Positions 5,796 through 61,049 of a stretch of 64,000 bases of DNA are shown in pieces. The notes beneath the pieces are model-generated. The model was not told where the DNA came from, made no database searches, and saw only the letters and a list, made by a program, of their open reading frames with translations. The position numbers and the translations under genes were made by a program. Numbering within the stretch: position 1 is the first letter of the stretch; each line of letters starts with the position of its first letter. The stretch covers positions 159,647 through 223,646 of IMG/VR virus record IMGVR_UViG_3300042326_002445; one strand, given 5' to 3'.

Positions 5796-5823
5796 TTGAC
5801 ACTCCTATCGTACACGCTATGAT
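5796..5823 (+). promoter_or_regulatory. sigma70-like promoter, predicted leaderless transcript
   Basis: TTGACA 5796-5801, 16-nt spacer, TATGAT 5818-5823; ATG at 5830 is 7 nt after the -10. Confidence 0.75.
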
Positions 5824-5829
5824 ACTGGC

Positions 5830-6063
5830 ATGAATCAGCTAGAGTCAATGCGTAAGATGTTATCGACAAAGTCTCAGGTCTGGGTGCGCTACAATCCAAA
5901 AGGAAGGGCTCCCCATCAGTCTAGGGCTAGGCTGCTTGAGCTACATGATTCTTATGCTTTGGTAAAACCAATCAAGCACGGAGGTCGTGTAGAAAAAGTG
6001 CCACTAAATACGATAAAGCTATGGCATAGTATGAATAATAAAATGAACAGTTTAAATGCGTAG
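5830..6063 (+). CDS. hypothetical protein
   Basis: 77 aa ORF directly behind the promoter. Confidence 0.7.
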   Translation: MNQLESMRKMLSTKSQVWVRYNPKGRAPHQSRARLLELHDSYALVKPIKHGGRVEKVPLNTIKLWHSMNNKMNSLNA

Positions 6064-23501: not shown

Positions 23502-24131
23502 ATGAATGCCATAAACTTTGATAAGTCTATTATGCAGCTTGTTTCTTATCCAAGAACCGGTAGTCACTATGTTCGCATAGTAATAGAAGACATTACAAAA
23601 AGGCCTTGTGCTCCTACTTCTTTTTTGGGTTTTGATAAATTTGAACCATGGGGGTTTCACCTGCATGACAGAATTGTGGGAAATGGAGATGAGGGCATAA
23701 CTTCTGGATTTGATAAAGTAATATACTTATATAGGAATCCAGTAGATACCATTTATTCACACATAAAATATCAGAATGAGAGCGATTGGAGATCAATAGC
23801 AGAAGAGTATAAAAATCATCTCATGAGATGGCTTTACAATAATCACGATTGTAAAAAAATGATTTTTGTTAATTATGACATATTGCTAGATAAGCCGATA
23901 AAAGAATTTAAAAGAATTTTAGAATTTATGGATTTCTCAGTCAATGATGATGATTTGCAAAAATCTATAAGCAGAACAACAATATCTAGAGTTAGGGCAT
24001 TAACGGAAAAGTTAGATAATAAAGTAGTAAGTCAAGATCATTTTAATGGTCAGTACTTAATCGATAAGTCAATTTTTATTTCAGAAAATTCAGAAGAAAT
24101 AAATAAAATGTTTCAAGGCATTTATAAATAA
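23502..24131 (+). CDS. PAPS-dependent sulfotransferase
   Basis: 5'-PSB loop SYPRTGSHYVR and 3'-PB motif YRNPVDTIYS. Confidence 0.8.
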   Translation: MNAINFDKSIMQLVSYPRTGSHYVRIVIEDITKRPCAPTSFLGFDKFEPWGFHLHDRIVGNGDEGITSGFDKVIYLYRNPVDTIYSHIKYQNESDWRSIAEEYKNHLMRWLYNNHDCKKMIFVNYDILLDKPIKEFKRILEFMDFSVNDDDLQKSISRTTISRVRALTEKLDNKVVSQDHFNGQYLIDKSIFISENSEEINKMFQGIYK

Positions 24132-25097
24132 ATGAAAATATATAAAAAAATAAACTTTATTGACTACAATATATCTCATGCGGAAACATGGAAACACGCT
24201 AGTATAATGTGCGGTTGCAGAGTTCCTAAAGATTTGATGCACAATTATTATACACCTCCAAATAATATATGGTTAAAAAAATGTAATAATTTTTTTGAAG
24301 ATGAAGTAAATTCTGGAATATCTGTATTCACAGACCATGCAATTGTGGAAGTGAATAAATACAGATCGCAACATAAAGTTGCTTTAATTTTAGAACCCCC
24401 AATTGAGGCAAGGGGTATTTATGAAAAAGCCGTCAGTCTTCAGAATAAATTTGAGATTATATTTACTTTTCGAAAAAAATTAATAGAAAAAAATCCTGAA
24501 AAATTCAAATTCATGCCAGCTGATTTTGTTACATTAGAAGATGATGCGCATAAAATTCATACAAAAAATAAACTGATCTCTATGATATATTCTGGTATGA
24601 GAGGTCACAATAGAGATCTTAGGCATCAGGTTGGTAATATTTTGAGCGACAAAATTACATTATTTGGTGGAGGTAGTCCAAGCGGAGATGTGCCTTTAAA
24701 ATCTGATACTTTAAAAGACTATATGTTTTCTGTAGTAATAGAAAATTCAAAACCTTTTGACTACTATTTTACTGAAAAAATATTAGATTGTTTCATAACA
24801 GGTAATATCCCTATATATAATGGCTCTCCATCAATAGGAGATTTTTTTGACAAAAGGGGATTTCTCACATGGTCGTCTATAGACGAACTTGCAAATATTA
24901 TTGATTCTATTTCAGAAGATAAATATTATGAAATGCTGCCTTATGTAAAAATAAATTATGAATTAGCAAAAAAGTACGTTAGTGCTGATGACGTAATGAG
25001 TGATTTAATTTATGAAGCACTTCACAATAAAACGATAAATACTATGGAAAGATTTATATACAAAAATTGGAGTAATAATGAAAATAATCAATTATGA
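24132..25097 (+). CDS. GT10 (alpha-1,3/4-fucosyltransferase-like)
   Basis: YMFSVVIENS..YYFTEKILDCFITGNIPIY. Confidence 0.8.
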   Translation: MKIYKKINFIDYNISHAETWKHASIMCGCRVPKDLMHNYYTPPNNIWLKKCNNFFEDEVNSGISVFTDHAIVEVNKYRSQHKVALILEPPIEARGIYEKAVSLQNKFEIIFTFRKKLIEKNPEKFKFMPADFVTLEDDAHKIHTKNKLISMIYSGMRGHNRDLRHQVGNILSDKITLFGGGSPSGDVPLKSDTLKDYMFSVVIENSKPFDYYFTEKILDCFITGNIPIYNGSPSIGDFFDKRGFLTWSSIDELANIIDSISEDKYYEMLPYVKINYELAKKYVSADDVMSDLIYEALHNKTINTMERFIYKNWSNNENNQL

Positions 25098-33111: not shown

Positions 33112-33945
33112 ATGCTTTTATCAATATTGGTTCCAGGCAAAAATGACAACTTTAGATACAATGGTTCAAAAACCATTGAATTTAATATTAATCAAACTTT
33201 AGATAATATAGAATATTCTGGGTTTAAAGATGTAGAACTCGTATTGTGCGATTGGGGTAGTGAGAAGAAAATAGTAGATGAAATAGTTAAAAGAAAACAT
33301 AAGAATTTTAAATGTGTTTATGTTCCCCCAGATATAGCACAAAAATATAATGGTCAGGCAAATTATTCTATAGTGCATCCAATTAACACTGCATTTAGGC
33401 ATAGCTCTGGTAAATATGTATGCTTCTGGGATTCTGATTGCTTTGTGCTTCAAGATAGCTTTGTAAAGCTTTATGAGTTTGTTCTTCAAATGGAAGCTAC
33501 TCAAGACATGCAATTTTATTGGGGTTCTAGATATCATATACCGTATGAATCCTATAATGATTTAAGAAGTCATAAAGAATTAGTTGCAAAAATAAATAAT
33601 GGTATGCAAGTTATGCATGATAAAATAGCTGGAGGAGGTAAATTTATGGGAGCCTCTATATCATTGTTAATGAACAGAATTTTATGGGAGGATAGTACTG
33701 GATGGTATGAAAATCTTCCGTATTGGGGATGGCAGGATATTGAGTTCCACCATCGCTTGATGAAGAGATACAGCTATGGCGGCGATCTGGAAGATTGGGG
33801 CATGAGTTTTTTTCACATGCTTCAGCCTGCCAGTAAAGACGGCACAAAAAATAAGCACTTGATGAATCCCTCAATAAACGCAACATTCTTTAAAGCTAAT
33901 CCTCCAAGTTGGGGTTTAGCAAATGAGAAATTGGAAATAATGTAA
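33112..33945 (+). CDS. GT2-like glycosyltransferase, tandem copy 1
   Basis: LCDWGS, WDSD DxD, WGWQDIEF. Confidence 0.7.
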   Translation: MLLSILVPGKNDNFRYNGSKTIEFNINQTLDNIEYSGFKDVELVLCDWGSEKKIVDEIVKRKHKNFKCVYVPPDIAQKYNGQANYSIVHPINTAFRHSSGKYVCFWDSDCFVLQDSFVKLYEFVLQMEATQDMQFYWGSRYHIPYESYNDLRSHKELVAKINNGMQVMHDKIAGGGKFMGASISLLMNRILWEDSTGWYENLPYWGWQDIEFHHRLMKRYSYGGDLEDWGMSFFHMLQPASKDGTKNKHLMNPSINATFFKANPPSWGLANEKLEIM

Positions 33946-44336: not shown

Positions 44337-44999
44337 ATGGAAAATACAGTAACATTTACAACTACAGCGATGGCTAGACCGGAGATACTTGAACAAACAT
44401 ATTATAATTTTCAAATATGCTTGAATATAAACATGAAAGATTTTGATTTACGAATAAATGTTGACCCATTGCCAAAAATAAATAAAGTTGATGAAGTAGT
44501 AAATGTAGCAAAGAAATTCTTTAAAAATGTTGACTATAACATATCAAAAGATGCCAATTTTCCTAGCGCAATCAAGTGGTGTTGGATGGACTTGCACACT
44601 AAATACACTTTTCACTTGGAAGACGATTGGGAGTTAACAAGGGGTATACCGCTCTATGAATTAGTAAAAATGCTTGAGAGCAATAAAGATATTAATCAAG
44701 TTTTACTAAGACCGTATCTTGAAACACATAAAGTAAGTTTAGTTCCTGGATTAATAAGAAGTGATGTCGCAATGTATTTAAGTAGGCATATGTTGCTTAA
44801 TAAAAATCCAGAAAAACAAATTCATTCAAATGAGCATACAGGAAAAGACGGAGATCCTGGCTTTGACGCCAATAAAGTCATAGTATATCCAGAAGATGTG
44901 TGCCTAAGGGACATCGGAAGAGTTTGGATGAAATCTCAATCTGTAATCAGGCCTGGCCCAGACTTCGTAAAATGGGAAAAGAAAAAAGATATTTACTGA
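44337..44999 (+). CDS. GT2-like glycosyltransferase
   Basis: TAMARP, INVD, FHLEDDW. Confidence 0.6.
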   Translation: MENTVTFTTTAMARPEILEQTYYNFQICLNINMKDFDLRINVDPLPKINKVDEVVNVAKKFFKNVDYNISKDANFPSAIKWCWMDLHTKYTFHLEDDWELTRGIPLYELVKMLESNKDINQVLLRPYLETHKVSLVPGLIRSDVAMYLSRHMLLNKNPEKQIHSNEHTGKDGDPGFDANKVIVYPEDVCLRDIGRVWMKSQSVIRPGPDFVKWEKKKDIY

Positions 45000-46003
45000 G
45001 CCATTTCGGGTGTAGCTACATTTTCCTTATGACCAGAAAACTGAATATTGACAATATCAGTATTGTCTCTAATAACGTCATCTAAAAATCTCTGCATCTC
45101 ATAAAGACTTGAGAATTCAACAAGTTTATTTTCAAACTTTAGTTTAAAAGTTCCAACAGCTTGCAGTATATCGCATTTATTAATGACTAGATCTGTGCAT
45201 CCAGATATCTTAATTGACTCCATAAGCTTGTCAACGTTTAGCCAATTCACCATTCTTTTTCTTCCGGTAGTAGATCCAAATTCTTCTCCTATTGTGATTA
45301 TCTTATTTAAAGTTTCATCATCCCAAAGAGATTCTGGGAATAGGGGGTCAACTCCGCTTTTAGTGTCATAAATTTTAGCAACACCAATCAGTCTGCGTAT
45401 TTTTTGAGGAGAGAAGCCAAGCGAGCAAGCACCATATGGCATAGTGGTACTACTTGTGACAAACGGATAGCAGCCATGGTCTATGTCGAGCCAAACACTC
45501 TGTGCCCCTTCGCAAAGTACCTTTCCCTCTAATTTTCCATCCCATAAGTACTCGCTCGGAAATAAGTCTTTTGCCCTGATCCCCTTGCGAAGCATTTTAT
45601 CTGCATAGCATGGAGCAATTCCCTGTCCAGTTGTTCCCAATCCTTTTTTTAAGTTATTTACATCAAACTGAATGTGTTCTTCAGTTATAATATGCGCATT
45701 AGGAGATACTTTTACTAAAGAAGTGTCAAAACCAGATGCCTTTAAGTATTCAATTTCTTCAAAAAACTTTTTCACATTTACTACACAACCTGGGCCTATA
45801 ATGCACTTTTTACCTTTAAAAATACCAGAAGGTATCATGTGTGTTTTGTATTTTTTGTCATTTAAATATACTGTATGTCCAGCATTTGGCCCACCATTCC
45901 ATCTGCAAACATAGTCATACTTTTCAGCAAGTGCGTTTGCAATTTTTCCCTTACCTTCATCGCCCCAAGAAAGTCCGTAAATAACATCAACAAATTTGAT
46001 CAT
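44993..46003 (-). CDS. purA: adenylosuccinate synthetase, short form
   Basis: WGDEGKG, RWNGGPNAGHT, IPSG, GTTGQGIAPCY, EGAQ, PFVTSS, TTGR. Confidence 0.93.
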   Translation of the reverse strand: MIKFVDVIYGLSWGDEGKGKIANALAEKYDYVCRWNGGPNAGHTVYLNDKKYKTHMIPSGIFKGKKCIIGPGCVVNVKKFFEEIEYLKASGFDTSLVKVSPNAHIITEEHIQFDVNNLKKGLGTTGQGIAPCYADKMLRKGIRAKDLFPSEYLWDGKLEGKVLCEGAQSVWLDIDHGCYPFVTSSTTMPYGACSLGFSPQKIRRLIGVAKIYDTKSGVDPLFPESLWDDETLNKIITIGEEFGSTTGRKRMVNWLNVDKLMESIKISGCTDLVINKCDILQAVGTFKLKFENKLVEFSSLYEMQRFLDDVIRDNTDIVNIQFSGHKENVATPEMAQ

Positions 46004-46382: not shown

Positions 46383-46386
46383 ATAA

Positions 46387-46476
46387 CGGATAGAGAGGGA
46401 TTCGAACCCCCGGATGACTTCTTGAGCCATCGGCGGTTTAGTAAACCGCAGCCTTAAACCACTCGGCCATCTATCC
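46387..46476 (-). tRNA. tRNA-Ser body with anticodon ACT (A34)
   Basis: GGATAGA/TCTATCC acceptor, GCGGT-TTACTAA-ACCGC anticodon arm, long variable arm, G73. Confidence 0.88.
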
Positions 46477-46502
46477 ATGAATTTTATATCGGCACTGGAT
46501 CT

Positions 46503-50898: not shown

Positions 50899-51894
50899 AT
50901 GCAAAAAACAGCGATTATCACAGGCGTCAATGGTCAGGATGGATCTTACCTTTCAGAGCTACTGCTATCGAAAGGTTACAGAGTAATAGGGCTGAAGAGA
51001 AGAACTTCAACTATTAATACATCTAGAGTAGATCATTTGATGTCTCACCCAGATTTTATATTGCGTTATTATGACTTGCAAGATGGACCATGCATAACTC
51101 ACCTTCTTGGCTCATGTCATGTTGATGAACTTTACAATCTGGCTGCACAGTCTCATGTGGGGGTGTCTTTTGAAATTCCAGAATACACATCATACGGGAT
51201 ATGCCAAGGAACCTTAAAGATACTTGAGGCAATACGCGCATCAAGTCCTCATACAAAGTTCTACCAAGCATCTTCTTCTGAAATGTTTGGAGACAGTACT
51301 GATTATGATGACAATCAGGCTTTTAATGAGAATAGTAAAATGTTACCTGTATCCCCATATGCATGCTCAAAGCTGCATGCGCATCACATGACTCGTGTTT
51401 ACAGAAATGCATACGGTATGCATGCGTCTTCCGGCATACTGTTTAATCATGAAAGCCCTCGTCGTGGTGAAACTTTTGTAACACGCAAAATCACAATTGC
51501 TGCTGCAAAGATTAAGCTTGGCATGCAAAGAAAGTTGAGTCTAGGCAATCTTGATGCTAAAAGAGATTGGGGTCATGCAGCAGATTATGTTGAAGCCATG
51601 TGGCTTATGCTTCAGCACGATTTTGGCGATGACTACGTGATCGCTACGAATGAAACTTACACTGTACGTGACTTCTTGAAGGTAGTTTTTGATCACGCTG
51701 GACTAGGAAGCTATGAGCAATATGTAGTAATAGACCAAAGACTTTTCCGTCCAAATGAAGTTCCTTTCTTAAAAGGAAATCCCGCAAAGGCAAAGTCAGT
51801 TTTGGGATGGAAGCCGAAGTACAACATGGAATCGCTAGCAATCAGCATGTTTGATGAAGACATGAAAAATTTAACAGAAAAGGTTTTAAGATGA
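50899..51894 (+). CDS. gmd: GDP-mannose 4,6-dehydratase
   Basis: ITGVNGQDGSYL, YNLAAQSHV, YQASSSEMFG, SPYACSK, NHESPRRGETFVTRKI, LGNLDAKRDWGHA. Confidence 0.95.
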   Translation: MQKTAIITGVNGQDGSYLSELLLSKGYRVIGLKRRTSTINTSRVDHLMSHPDFILRYYDLQDGPCITHLLGSCHVDELYNLAAQSHVGVSFEIPEYTSYGICQGTLKILEAIRASSPHTKFYQASSSEMFGDSTDYDDNQAFNENSKMLPVSPYACSKLHAHHMTRVYRNAYGMHASSGILFNHESPRRGETFVTRKITIAAAKIKLGMQRKLSLGNLDAKRDWGHAADYVEAMWLMLQHDFGDDYVIATNETYTVRDFLKVVFDHAGLGSYEQYVVIDQRLFRPNEVPFLKGNPAKAKSVLGWKPKYNMESLAISMFDEDMKNLTEKVLR

Positions 51895-52330: not shown

Positions 52331-52525
52331 ATGATTCTTAAAGCATACTTTCTTCCAGTTGCAGCAGCTTTCTGCGTTTTTGCAGTAACTGCTGCAATTT
52401 TTATTCACAGCAAATTAAAAAATAAAAAAGTAACTAGAAAAAGTTATTCTGGAAATTCTTTGTCTTCTCAAATGCTTGACGACATTAAAAAAATAGAGAA
52501 GATTCTCTATGATAGTCAGGGATGA
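52331..52525 (+). CDS. small membrane-anchored protein
   Basis: N-terminal hydrophobic helix followed by basic residues. Confidence 0.65.
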   Translation: MILKAYFLPVAAAFCVFAVTAAIFIHSKLKNKKVTRKSYSGNSLSSQMLDDIKKIEKILYDSQG

Positions 52526-52549: not shown

Positions 52550-52578
52550 TTGACAAGTATAGACAACATCTCTATACT
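52550..52578 (+). promoter_or_regulatory. sigma70 promoter of csrA
   Basis: TTGACA 52550-52555, 17 nt, TATACT 52573-52578. Confidence 0.8.
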
Positions 52579-52621
52579 ACAAGAGAAGTCACGTGACTCA
52601 AACATCAAGCCAAGGAAGGTT

Positions 52622-52813
52622 ATGCAAAAAGAAAAAAACGAAAAGAAGGTTTTAGTTGTTTCTCGAAAAGTAGGAGAGATTGTGGTGATTGGCGACAGCG
52701 CCAGCCCTCTTGGAGAGATTGAAGTTGTTCGAATTGACGGGGGTAAGGTAAGAATTGCATTGAGGTTTCCTGAAGACATCAGGATCAACCGTAAAGAGAT
52801 TGCGTTAGCGTAA
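52622..52813 (+). CDS. csrA: carbon storage regulator CsrA/RsmA-family RNA-binding protein
   Basis: VLVVSRKVGEIVVIG...EVVRIDGGKVRIAL.FPEDIRINRKEI. Confidence 0.85.
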   Translation: MQKEKNEKKVLVVSRKVGEIVVIGDSASPLGEIEVVRIDGGKVRIALRFPEDIRINRKEIALA

Positions 52814-52837
52814 TAAGTTTTTTCATTTAGATTTTTG

Positions 52838-52868
52838 AAGGCTGCACATGAATATGTGCGGCCTTTTT
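52838..52868 (+). terminator. intrinsic terminator after csrA
   Basis: AAGGCTGCACAT-GAAT-ATGTGCGGCCTT plus T tract. Confidence 0.8.
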
Positions 52869-52913
52869 ATCTTTTTAGAACAGTGTTGGATATAGGTGTA
52901 TAGGAGATACTTC

Positions 52914-54063: not shown

Positions 54064-54189
54064 ATGGACCCGATACTGCAATTAGCAATTATTCTTGTTT
54101 GTGGCGCACTCGGAACTGTAATTATAATTAATGAAGTGCCAAGAAACGTAATAAAAGCAAAAAGAAAAAGTAAGGTAAAAAGCAAATGA
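54064..54189 (+). CDS. small membrane protein (not in ORF track)
   Basis: 41 aa MDPILQLAIILVCGALGTVIII plus basic tail; stop overlaps the next ATG. Confidence 0.55.
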   Translation: MDPILQLAIILVCGALGTVIIINEVPRNVIKAKRKSKVKSK

Positions 54190-54533
54190 AAGTAGTTATA
54201 GCTGGGTCGAGAGGTATTAACGACAAAAATGTCGTTAATCAGGCTATTAAAGACTCTGGTTTTAAAATCACAGAAATACTTTGTGGCTGTGCAAAGGGAG
54301 TGGACAGTCTAGGTAGAGATTACGGTCTGCAAAATAATATTCCAGTTGCTGAATTTCCAGCAAACTGGACTAAGTACGGAAATGCAGCTGGCATTATGAG
54401 AAATATCGTTATGTCTAAAAAGTGCGATGCTCTCATTGCTATTTGGGACGGCCACTCAAGAGGCACGAAGCACATGATTGAGTGTGTTGAAAAACTAAAA
54501 CTTCCTAGTTATGTAAAAATAATCGAAACATAA
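54186..54533 (+). CDS. YspA-related SLOG family protein
   Basis: IAGSR, GCAKGVDSLG, ANW.KYG.AAG..RN..M, IAIWDG.SRGTKHMI. Confidence 0.85.
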   Translation: MKVVIAGSRGINDKNVVNQAIKDSGFKITEILCGCAKGVDSLGRDYGLQNNIPVAEFPANWTKYGNAAGIMRNIVMSKKCDALIAIWDGHSRGTKHMIECVEKLKLPSYVKIIET

Positions 54534-60470: not shown

Positions 60471-60683
60471 ATGAATACTTGCAAAGCAATCGAACAGTTC
60501 ATGAAAGAAAACGGCTTTTTCATTTCAAGAAAAGGCAAACACTTAGTTTGGAAGAATCGTGATGGAGCAACTGTGGTGACAAGCAAAACTCCATCAGACC
60601 ACAGAACATTGAAAAACATAGAGTCATTAGTCAGAAAAATTAGACGGACAAACAGTTTGGCTAGTTTAAAAAATGCGGCATAA
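60471..60683 (+). CDS. HicA-like (dsRBD-fold) protein
   Basis: FMKENGF...KGKHLVWK...VVTSKTPSD, the HicA G-x-H pattern. Confidence 0.6.
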   Translation: MNTCKAIEQFMKENGFFISRKGKHLVWKNRDGATVVTSKTPSDHRTLKNIESLVRKIRRTNSLASLKNAA

Positions 60684-60758: not shown

Positions 60759-61049
60759 ATGACACTTGCCACTTCTACGAAAAAGCCATCGAAGCACCAC
60801 TACTTCATCCATTACAAGAAGGGTGACTACATCTCCACCAGAGATCTGCTGGAGGAGCGTTACGAAAGCGCCGTGTACGGATCAGGCATGTTCATCCAGA
60901 CGGGAGCATTCGACATCCACCTGTACTGCACTTCACAGAAGTTCAGAAACATCAAGCGGCTTCTCCATCGGAATGTCGTGAACAAGCTTGGGTCGCCCAT
61001 TAGTTTCAACTACACCCGCCAGACTGCTGCCGAATACAACAAGAGATAA
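60759..61049 (+). CDS. hypothetical protein, paralog of 63465..63734
   Basis: KKP.K.HY...Y..GDY...GSG....FD.H.YCT shared. Confidence 0.75.
   Translation: MTLATSTKKPSKHHYFIHYKKGDYISTRDLLEERYESAVYGSGMFIQTGAFDIHLYCTSQKFRNIKRLLHRNVVNKLGSPISFNYTRQTAAEYNKR

What the first reader, a model, noticed from the sequence alone, without database searches (positions are those of the whole stretch)
52550..52868. Stand-alone phage csrA transcription unit: possible translation takeover with leaderless mRNAs
Seen: a near-consensus promoter, csrA and its own terminator. Known: CsrA binds GGA motifs at or near SD sequences and blocks initiation. Inference: phage CsrA could silence SD-led host mRNAs while leaderless phage early mRNAs are immune. 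Together with the HicA-like gene, SPOUT methylase, TilS and tRNAs, this would be a coordinated translation-remodelling system. Caveat: many phage genes here, including csrA itself, have GGA-containing SDs.
Basis: inference. Interest (0 to 1): 0.7.

Follow-up and report, generated by a model that had tools for sequence, protein, structure and literature searches.

The report
Self-contained csrA gene in huge lake phage
A huge freshwater phage carries a real, well-conserved copy of the bacterial translation regulator CsrA with its own promoter and terminator. This kind of phage gene is already known, and the proposed "leaderless mRNA takeover" mechanism is not backed by the genome.

Summary
Window 52550-52876 holds a TTGACA-17-TATACT promoter, a 63-aa CsrA gene (52622-52813; Pfam CsrA 40.6 bits against a cut-off of 27) and a strong terminator (-20.1 kcal/mol, z -6.3). 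Promoter, SD block and terminator are kept in three related phage lineages. The gene sits at the same position in a more distant lineage (60% aa identity). dN/dS is about 0.06.

The protein keeps the CsrA RNA-binding residues and models as the intertwined homodimer. It has a Lys-rich N-terminal extension and a 4-aa loop insertion, and ends just after beta5. Its closest cellular relatives are orphan CsrA paralogs of Planctomycetota that are not linked to fliW. Its own SD GGA lies in the loop of a small hairpin in all six lineages, with two different stems, so it probably represses its own translation.

- About half of the phage's genes have GGA in their ribosome-binding site.
- Promoter-to-ATG spacings typical of leaderless mRNAs are not enriched.
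- The "system" partners are scattered over 58 kb, and the HicA match is below threshold.

Phage csrA genes are already catalogued, and one has been knocked down. This is a new member of a known kind. Host and targets remain unknown.

The parts
52550..52578 (+). Sigma-70-type promoter: -35 TTGACA (52550-52555), 17-nt spacer, -10 TATACT (52573-52578). The predicted transcription start is near 52585-52586.
   Evidence: 11/12 match. It is kept as TTGAC(A/T)-17-TA(T/C)(A/G)CT in L007, L108 and L110 while the spacer diverges. The start site is inferred, not measured.
52587..52598 (+). Small hairpin at the 5' end of the predicted transcript (AGUC-ACGU-GACU). It is probably an mRNA-stabilising 5' stem-loop.
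   Evidence: Minimum-energy fold. L007 has a 7-bp stem of different sequence at the same place (GAAAGCA/UGCUUUC), and L014 has UGCUG.../CAGCA. The function is inferred.
52608..52621 (+). Shine-Dalgarno hairpin AGCC[AAGGAA]GGUU. It presents GGA (52614-52616) in its loop and ends 1 nt before the start codon. It is a candidate CsrA self-binding (autoregulatory) site.
   Evidence: Folds. The same criterion is met in all six lineages with two different stems, AGCC/GGUU and GCAA/UUGC. Only 5% of all GGAs in the genome, and 1 of 80 SD GGAs, sit in such a hairpin. Binding itself was not tested.
52622..52813 (+). csrA coding sequence: 63 aa, followed by a second in-frame TAA at 52814-52816.
   Evidence: Pfam PF02599, 40.6 bits against 27. 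PDB CsrA/RsmE matches at E 5e-5. dN/dS 0.06 against L007. The homodimer model scores 0.54 against a best control of 0.01.
52837..52876 (+). Intrinsic terminator: 13-bp stem, GAAU loop, then UUUUUAUCUUUUU.
   Evidence: -20.1 kcal/mol, z -6.3. Conserved with one compensatory change and wobble changes in L007, L108 and L110. Absent in L014.

Best explanation
This is a functional CsrA-family RNA-binding translational regulator. A clade of very large freshwater phages has carried it for a long time.

In this lineage it is packaged as a moron-like cassette. A host-type sigma-70 promoter drives a roughly 37-nt leader with a 5' stabilising hairpin. A strong terminator ends the transcript, so host RNA polymerase can express it independently of neighbouring genes.

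The protein forms the usual intertwined dimer and recognises GGA in hairpin loops. Its own ribosome-binding site is such a hairpin, so it most likely represses its own translation and holds itself at a set level.

Its main targets are probably a limited set of host mRNAs, and perhaps some phage mRNAs, that carry GGA in loops at or near the ribosome-binding site. It would reprogramme host post-transcriptional control rather than shut translation down globally.

It ends right after beta5 and is nearest to CsrA paralogs not linked to fliW. It is therefore predicted to escape FliW-type antagonism.

Shown here: identity, conserved residues, selection, cassette anatomy and conservation, and the GGA hairpin. 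Inferred: dimer function, autoregulation, targets, timing and escape from antagonists.
For: Family membership.

Residues invariant across the subfamily include the equivalents of E. coli L2, R6, G9, E10, V30, R44 and E46 (numbering).

The homodimer model scores 0.54 against a best control of 0.01. In the tool's calibration that mark was reached by 20 of 30 solved homodimers and 1 of 23 monomers. The counts hold only roughly here because my own alignment was used.

dN/dS is 0.06 at saturating dS.

The gene keeps its position (thioredoxin, GDP-mannose-dehydratase-like gene, small ORFs, csrA..., YAcAr) in lineages at 70% and 60% aa identity, on contigs up to 406 kb.

Promoter and terminator are conserved.

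The GGA-in-loop SD hairpin occurs with two stem versions.

The closest cellular relatives are insertion-type CsrAs of Planctomycetota that lie apart from the fliW-csrA pair in the same genomes.

Literature: knock-down of a phage csrA reduces plaque size (PMC11879866). The plasmid CsrA homologue RsmQ takes global regulatory control of its host and switches it from motile to sessile behaviour (PMC9928087). Phage and host CsrA presence correlate (PMC8450108).
Against: No RNA-binding, expression or timing data exist. No RNA run was listed for this stretch.

Only one conserved GGA site lies in the leader, whereas well-studied CsrA targets usually have two or more. The small hairpins are not more stable than shuffled sequence (z -0.3 to -1.8). 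They could simply be a translation-damping structure.

The host is unknown. The nearest bacterial CsrAs come from genomes of 62-70% GC, while the phage is 34.7% GC.

The homodimer pass may reflect the model's memory of solved CsrA dimers.

I found no capsid, terminase or sheath Pfam hit in the held 223 kb. The viral status rests on the IMG/VR classification and on phage-like content.
Confidence: 0.62

Rival explanations
1. The phage CsrA globally blocks SD-led host mRNAs, leaderless phage early mRNAs escape, and it acts as one coordinated translation-remodelling system with HicA, SpoU, TilS and the tRNAs.
For: A few leaderless-looking arrangements exist:
- TTGACA-16-TATGAT, 6 nt, then ATG at 5830.
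- TTGACA-16-TAAACT, 6 nt, then ATG at 60759.
- TTGATT-16-TATAAT, 8 nt, then ATG at 52331.

The TilS-like gene, the SpoU methylase and six tRNAs are really in the window.
Against: Leaderless spacing is not enriched genome-wide: 3 observed against 3.0 expected. The 52331 promoter is not conserved in L007.

51% of phage genes have GGA in the RBS window, and 41% have an SD against 9% in controls.

The genes are dispersed over 58 kb, and the HicA match is sub-threshold.

From established knowledge, CsrA binds specific GGA contexts, not SDs in general.
Confidence: 0.07
2. A carbon-flux regulator for the phage's glycan programme. CsrA shuts down host storage or gluconeogenic mRNAs, its classical role, so that sugar phosphates feed the phage's sugar-nucleotide and glycan genes.
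For: csrA lies two small genes downstream of a GDP-mannose-4,6-dehydratase-like gene in every lineage examined.

Window 20-44 kb encodes a sulfotransferase, a GT10 fucosyltransferase, GT2 and GT1 enzymes and several epimerases/dehydratases.
Against: Linkage alone is weak evidence. No operon link exists, because csrA has its own promoter and terminator. The host and its CsrA regulon are unknown. No target site was identified.
Confidence: 0.12
3. A regulator of the phage's own timing. It represses a subset of phage mRNAs, for example delaying middle or late proteins, and does not act on host transcripts.
For: Half of the phage genes carry GGA in the RBS.

In L007, L108 and L110 the start region of the gene just downstream folds into an 11-bp hairpin. 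Its SD (CGGAG) lies in the loop.
Against: That downstream hairpin is degraded in the window's own lineage.

Only 1 of 80 other phage SD GGAs sits in a loop.

The three densest 200-nt clusters of ANGGA on the + strand are not clearly above chance. The two I read (window 2739 and 56550) look like ordinary coding sequence.
Confidence: 0.12
4. A defence suppressor. It represses host immune mRNAs such as cas operons, as proposed for phage RsmA homologues.
For: RsmA binds cas mRNAs and represses CRISPR-Cas in Serratia, and those authors proposed that phage homologues exploit this (PMC8450108). A host-type promoter fits early expression.
Against: Nothing in this window bears on it, and the host and its defences are unknown.
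Confidence: 0.07

Closest known systems
Bacterial CsrA/RsmA/RsmE (E. coli CsrA, Pseudomonas RsmE; PDB 1y00, 2jpp)
   Same: The same Pfam family. The beta1 and beta5 RNA-binding residues are conserved (R6, G9, E10, R44, E46, I47 equivalents). It has a predicted intertwined dimer and a GGA at its own SD, as in self-repressing E. coli csrA (the E. coli point is from my own knowledge).
   Different: About 35% identity only. It has a 9-aa Lys-rich N-terminal extension and a 4-aa insertion (S-P-L-G) between beta2 and beta3. The chain ends 3 residues after the I47 equivalent, so the C-terminal helix and tail are nearly absent. No Csr/Rsm sponge RNA was detected in the window.
Orphan (non-fliW-linked) insertion-type CsrA paralogs of Planctomycetota (e.g. 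Phycisphaerales MAG proteins MBC7835441.1, MDP6692934.1)
   Same: They share the P-x-x-P-[LMI]-G insertion and reach up to 56% identity, the highest of any cellular relatives found.
   Different: The bacterial ones start directly at beta1 and carry 15-60-aa C-terminal tails. They lie in genomes of 62-70% GC. Many are tandem CsrA-CsrA fusions. The phage proteins are single-domain and tail-less, in DNA of 35% GC.
Previously reported phage CsrA homologues (Bcep22-like phages such as JC1 gp47, P. aeruginosa phage RsmM type, E. coli phage PTXU04 gp28, PHROG 9500)
   Same: A small CsrA gene carried by a phage and often described as a moron. Knock-down of PTXU04 gp28 reduces plaque size (PMC11879866). 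They are catalogued in about 1.2% of phage genomes (PMC7366521) and in IMG/VR (PMC8450108).
   Different: Those are mostly close to gammaproteobacterial CsrA and sit in phages of 40-100 kb. This one is in a phage of about 400 kb from lake water, belongs to a different CsrA subfamily, and finds only Bacillus phage Dartukuta (34% identity) in the phage collection searched.
Plasmid-borne RsmQ of pQBR103
   Same: A CsrA homologue on a mobile element that takes over host translational regulation (PMC9928087). This is the best functional precedent.
   Different: It is on a plasmid, not a phage. It works in a host with a resident Gac-Rsm system and sponge RNAs. Here the host system is unknown.

Membership tests
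CsrA/RsmA family (PF02599) | Profile match above the curated threshold | tested here: met
   40.6 bits against a gathering score of 27, E 2.5e-10, profile positions 2-48 of 53. PDB CsrA/RsmE chains match at E 5e-5.
CsrA/RsmA family (PF02599) | Conserved RNA-binding residues in beta1 and beta5 (E. coli L4, R6, R7, V40, V42, R44, I47) | tested here: met
   The equivalents are V13, R15, K16, I53, I55, R57 and I60. The R6, G9, E10, R44 and E46 equivalents are invariant in the 17-sequence subfamily alignment. The list of critical residues is from established knowledge.
CsrA/RsmA family (PF02599) | Intertwined homodimer | tested here: met
   Model score 0.54 against a best control of 0.01. In the tool's calibration the mark was reached by 20 of 30 solved homodimers and 1 of 23 single chains; the counts are only rough because my own alignment was used. 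About 168 contacts span residues 7-59. This is a prediction and may come from memory of solved CsrA dimers.
CsrA/RsmA family (PF02599) | Binds GGA motifs in RNA hairpin loops | not testable with these tools
   There is only indirect support. Its own SD GGA is in a hairpin loop in six lineages with two stem versions, against a 5% background.
CsrA/RsmA family (PF02599) | C-terminal alpha-helix after beta5 | tested here: inconclusive
   The chain ends 3-4 residues after the I47 equivalent, so at most about one helical turn is possible. A 49-aa truncated CsrA chain exists in PDB entry 5z38. The core can therefore exist without the tail.
FliW-partnered CsrA (Bacillus/Thermotoga type) | fliW gene adjacent or present, and a C-terminal extension for FliW control | tested here: not met
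   No FliW match in the held 223 kb, which is 55% of the genome. There is no C-terminal extension. In Planctomycetota the fliW-linked csrA is the other paralog, the one without the insertion.
Csr/Rsm system with sponge sRNA (CsrB/RsmZ type) | A GGA-rich decoy RNA | tested here: not met
   Rfam at gathering thresholds finds only six tRNAs in the window. The top ANGGA clusters genome-wide are not clearly above chance, and the two I read are in coding sequence. Only 55% of the genome is held.
Phage moron (self-contained promoter-gene-terminator cassette) | Own promoter and own terminator flanking a gene not needed for the phage core functions | tested here: met
   However, it is absent as a cassette in lineage L014, and dispensability was not tested.
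   41% carry an SD against 9% in controls. 80 of 156 genes have an RBS GGA. Leaderless spacing gives 3 observed against 3.0 expected.

The most novel reading that the evidence does not exclude
A widespread clade of roughly 400-kb freshwater phages has domesticated an orphan, tail-less CsrA that host antagonists (FliW or decoy RNAs) cannot switch off. The phage expresses it from a host-type promoter on entry and limits it only through a GGA hairpin on its own ribosome-binding site. It uses the protein to seize the host's post-transcriptional network. One possible purpose is to redirect carbon into the phage's large fucose/sulfate glycan programme.
Probability: 0.2. Interest if true: 0.55.

Novelty: new member of a known kind. 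Interest (0 to 1): 0.3.

Why it matters
Phage-borne CsrA genes are catalogued but almost unstudied. There is one knock-down phenotype and no known target. This copy is a clean case for study.

- It is strongly conserved across a widespread lake phage clade.
- It sits in a compact cassette with a plausible self-binding site, which gives a ready-made test RNA.
- It is a minimal, tail-less member of a CsrA subfamily that has itself not been characterised.

If it proves blind to host antagonists, it would show how a virus can lock a global bacterial regulator in the 'on' state. As it stands, it is an ordinary though well-documented addition to a known class.

Tried and rejected
1. RNA evidence. 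No RNA run was listed for the csrA unit, so transcript ends and timing could not be checked. The DNA runs are all lake water.

2. Host identification:
- The GDP-mannose-dehydratase-like gene hits many phyla at about 55% identity. Planctomycetota are frequent among them, but the signal is not decisive.
- UvrD hits only the phage clade (55-79%) and then bacteria at about 35%.
- CsrA itself points to Planctomycetota, but those genomes are 62-70% GC against 34.7% for the phage.
- The host is left open.

3. The family alignment was too divergent for a genome-contig scan.

4. Phage targets. The densest ANGGA clusters that I read are ordinary coding sequence.

5. A phage-specific promoter motif. 7-mer enrichment in intergenic regions gave nothing.

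6. PurZ/Z-genome idea for the 335-aa adenylosuccinate-synthetase-like gene. Rejected, because it is far closer to PurA (E 2e-65) than to PurZ (E 1e-19 to 4e-11).

7. Jug gut phages as the identity of this phage. Rejected, because the samples are lake water.

8. Viral hallmarks. There is no Terminase_6N, Phage_sheath_1 or HK97 capsid Pfam hit in the held 223 kb. The record is 55% complete.

9. The neighbourhoods of the Planctomycetota orphan csrA genes were too noisy to read from ORF lists.

Full report
WHAT IS THERE

The window is the last 64 kb of a 223,646-bp IMG/VR virus record. CheckV rates the record 55% complete, so the genome is about 400 kb. It has 34.7% GC and the standard genetic code. 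Identical sequence occurs in 24 listed lake-water DNA runs.

At 52550-52578 lies TTGACA-17-TATACT, an 11/12 match. A 63-aa ORF follows, from ATG 52622 to tandem TAA TAA stops at 52811-52816. A 13-bp-stem terminator with a T-run lies at 52837-52876 (-20.1 kcal/mol, z -6.3).

The ORF is a CsrA:
- Pfam PF02599 gives 40.6 bits against a gathering score of 27.
- PHROG 9500, 'CsrA-like regulator', matches.
- PDB CsrA/RsmE chains match at E 5e-5.

Promoter-like sites in general are at chance level here: 25 found against 23.7 expected in 10 kb. Sites of 11/12 or better are rarer, with 16 on both strands of the whole record. One placed correctly in a 96-nt gap has a chance of about 0.003. Its conservation, described next, argues that it is real.

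CONSERVATION

The protein database holds only the phage's own clade as close relatives: P0001 (identical, 39 contigs), and P0002, P0003 and P0004 at 70-75% identity.

In L007, L108 and L110 the following are retained while the intervening sequence diverges:
- the -35 TTGAC(A/T);
- the -10 TA(T/C)(A/G)CT;
- a 5' hairpin of different sequence;
- the block AGCCAAGGAAGGTTATG;
- the terminator hairpin, with one compensatory change and several wobble changes.

A more distant lineage (P0006, 60% identity, on a 280-kb contig) has csrA at the same syntenic place. The order is DUF5872, thioredoxin, GDP-mannose-dehydratase-like gene, small ORF(s), csrA..., YAcAr. That lineage has no recognisable promoter or terminator of its own.

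dN/dS between the window and L007 is 0.06, with dS saturated. The gene is therefore old in this clade and under strong constraint. The cassette packaging is a feature of one sub-clade.

THE PROTEIN

Alignment to solved CsrA/RsmE and to 16 relatives shows that the beta1 and beta5 RNA-binding residues are preserved. In E. coli numbering these are the L4, R6, R7, V40, V42, R44 and I47 equivalents. The R6, G9, E10, R44 and E46 equivalents are invariant in the subfamily.

There are three departures from canonical CsrA:
- a 6-9-aa N-terminal extension, MQKEKNEKK in the window;
- a 4-aa insertion between beta2 and beta3;
- a chain that stops 3-4 residues after the I47 equivalent.

A two-copy model passes the tool's mark, with a score of 0.54 against a best control of 0.01. 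In the tool's calibration the mark was reached by 20 of 30 solved homodimers and 1 of 23 single chains. These counts hold only roughly because my own alignment was used. The interface runs through residues 7-59, as in the intertwined CsrA dimer. This shows likeness to solved CsrA dimers; it does not show that the protein binds itself.

RELATIVES

An exhaustive HMMER search found 233 relatives at E up to 0.001. Most share the insertion, and many are tandem CsrA-CsrA fusions. The named ones come from Phycisphaerales MAGs.

In 201 sampled Planctomycetota genomes, 61 have a match, with a best identity of 56%. In the five best genomes, fliW lies next to a different csrA that lacks the insertion. 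The insertion-type paralog lies elsewhere.

The phage gene thus belongs to an uncharacterised 'orphan' CsrA subfamily. Those bacterial loci are 62-70% GC, so they are not evidence for the host. Other attempts to find the host gave no answer.

A LIKELY SELF-BINDING SITE

The SD GGA of csrA sits in the loop of a short hairpin that ends at the start codon:
- AGCC[AAGGAA]GGUU in the window, with one more pair in L007, L108 and L110;
- GCAA[AGGA]UUGC in L014;
- AGCAA[GGGA]UUGCU in L016.

By the same criterion, only 5% of all GGAs in the genome and 1 of 80 SD GGAs of other phage genes are so placed.

GGA in a loop that overlaps the SD is the textbook CsrA site. E. coli csrA represses its own translation in this way (both points are from my own knowledge). 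I therefore infer negative autoregulation.

Two caveats apply. There is only one conserved site. The hairpins are weak and not better than shuffled sequence.

I called 156 genes with a crude caller.
- 41% of first start codons have an SD-like motif at -18..-4, against 9% at internal in-frame start codons. The motif peaks at -14..-9.
- 80 genes have GGA in that window.

For first ATGs of ORFs of at least 45 aa that follow a good -10/-35 pair, spacings of 5-8 nt occur 3 times. The other spacings predict 3.0.

The individual candidates are at 5830, 52331 and 60759. The one beside csrA (52331) loses its -10 in L007.

The proposed partners are real in part:
- TilS-like PP-loop protein, E 1e-45;
- SpoU methylase, E 4e-22;
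- six tRNAs in the window and seven in the record.

They are dispersed, however, and the HicA-like match is below threshold. No tRNA-Ile(CAU) for TilS is in the held sequence. No FliW and no sponge RNA were found.

WHAT IS KNOWN

- Phage csrA genes were surveyed in 2020: 30 of 2517 phage genomes, including phages of hosts without csrA (PMC7366521).
- They were surveyed again in 2021, including IMG/VR, with a phage-host correlation and an anti-CRISPR proposal (PMC8450108).
- In JC1 the protein may be virion-associated (PMC9144972).
- Knock-down of PTXU04 gp28 gives small plaques (PMC11879866).
- The plasmid homologue RsmQ takes global regulatory control of its host (PMC9928087).

The kind is therefore known. 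What is new here is the setting (a roughly 400-kb lake phage clade), the subfamily, the minimal architecture and the candidate autoregulatory hairpin.

VERDICT

Noticed in passing
window 20000-44300 and 50899-51894: A large glycan-biosynthesis island. It holds a sulfotransferase (23502-24131), a GT10 fucosyltransferase-like gene (24132-25097), a GT2 (33112-33945), GT1-like genes, several NAD epimerases/dehydratases and a transketolase-like protein. A GDP-mannose-4,6-dehydratase-like gene lies just upstream of csrA. Together they suggest that the phage makes a fucosylated or sulfated glycan.
   Followed up: partly
genome G000:C1:371-84881 and 127234-152899 (outside the window): About 110 kb is taken up by consecutive giant ORFs on one strand, for example 5596, 3965, 3947, 3286 and 2808 aa. 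A neighbouring 1228-aa ORF in the same run has a Laminin_G_3 lectin-like domain; the others tested have no Pfam match.
   Followed up: partly
L014:7572-7700 (relative's locus, upstream of its csrA): A consensus promoter (TTGACA-17-TATCAT) is followed by a highly structured GC-rich element of about 90 nt (-54.7 kcal/mol for 153 nt, z -6.3). It has no Rfam family and is absent from the window.
   Followed up: partly
proteins P0005, P0008, P0009 and others: Many relatives are tandem CsrA-CsrA fusions (138-255 aa, two matched stretches), some with an extra C-terminal domain. Named examples are from Phycisphaerales. They may be single-chain pseudo-dimers.
   Followed up: no
window 44993-46003 (-): A 335-aa adenylosuccinate-synthetase-like protein with an internal deletion. 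It is much closer to bacterial PurA (E 2e-65) than to PurZ of Z-genome phages (E 1e-19 or weaker), so there is no evidence for a 2-aminoadenine genome.
   Followed up: yes
window 5796-5848: A divergent promoter pair. TTGACA-16-TATGAT lies 6 nt before the ATG of a 77-aa ORF (+ strand), a leaderless-looking arrangement. It faces TTGACT-18-TATCAT, which drives a 158-aa ORF with an AGGAG SD (- strand). The layout resembles a genetic switch. Neither protein has a Pfam match.
   Followed up: partly
window 46386-46477 (-): A 92-nt tRNA called Ser with anticodon ACU, which is unusual because of A at position 34. It is the first gene of a four-tRNA cluster (Ser, Asn, Thr, Tyr) and scores 53.6 bits in Rfam.
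   Followed up: no
window 54186-54533: A YAcAr/SLOG-family protein (PF10686, E 4e-12) is conserved near csrA in all lineages examined. Its role is unknown.
   Followed up: no
L007:6256-6296, L108, L110 (start of the gene downstream of csrA): In three relatives the start codon of the downstream 214-aa gene is buried in an 11-bp hairpin (CATGGATAT/ATATCCATG). Its SD (CGGAG) lies in the loop. The stem is degraded in the window's own lineage.
   Followed up: partly
window 60471-60683 and 60759-61049: A 70-aa ORF has a sub-threshold HicA_toxin match (21.5 bits against 27). It is followed by a 96-aa ORF behind a TTGACA-16-TAAACT promoter 6 nt from its ATG. This may be a degenerate hicAB-like pair.
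   Followed up: partly
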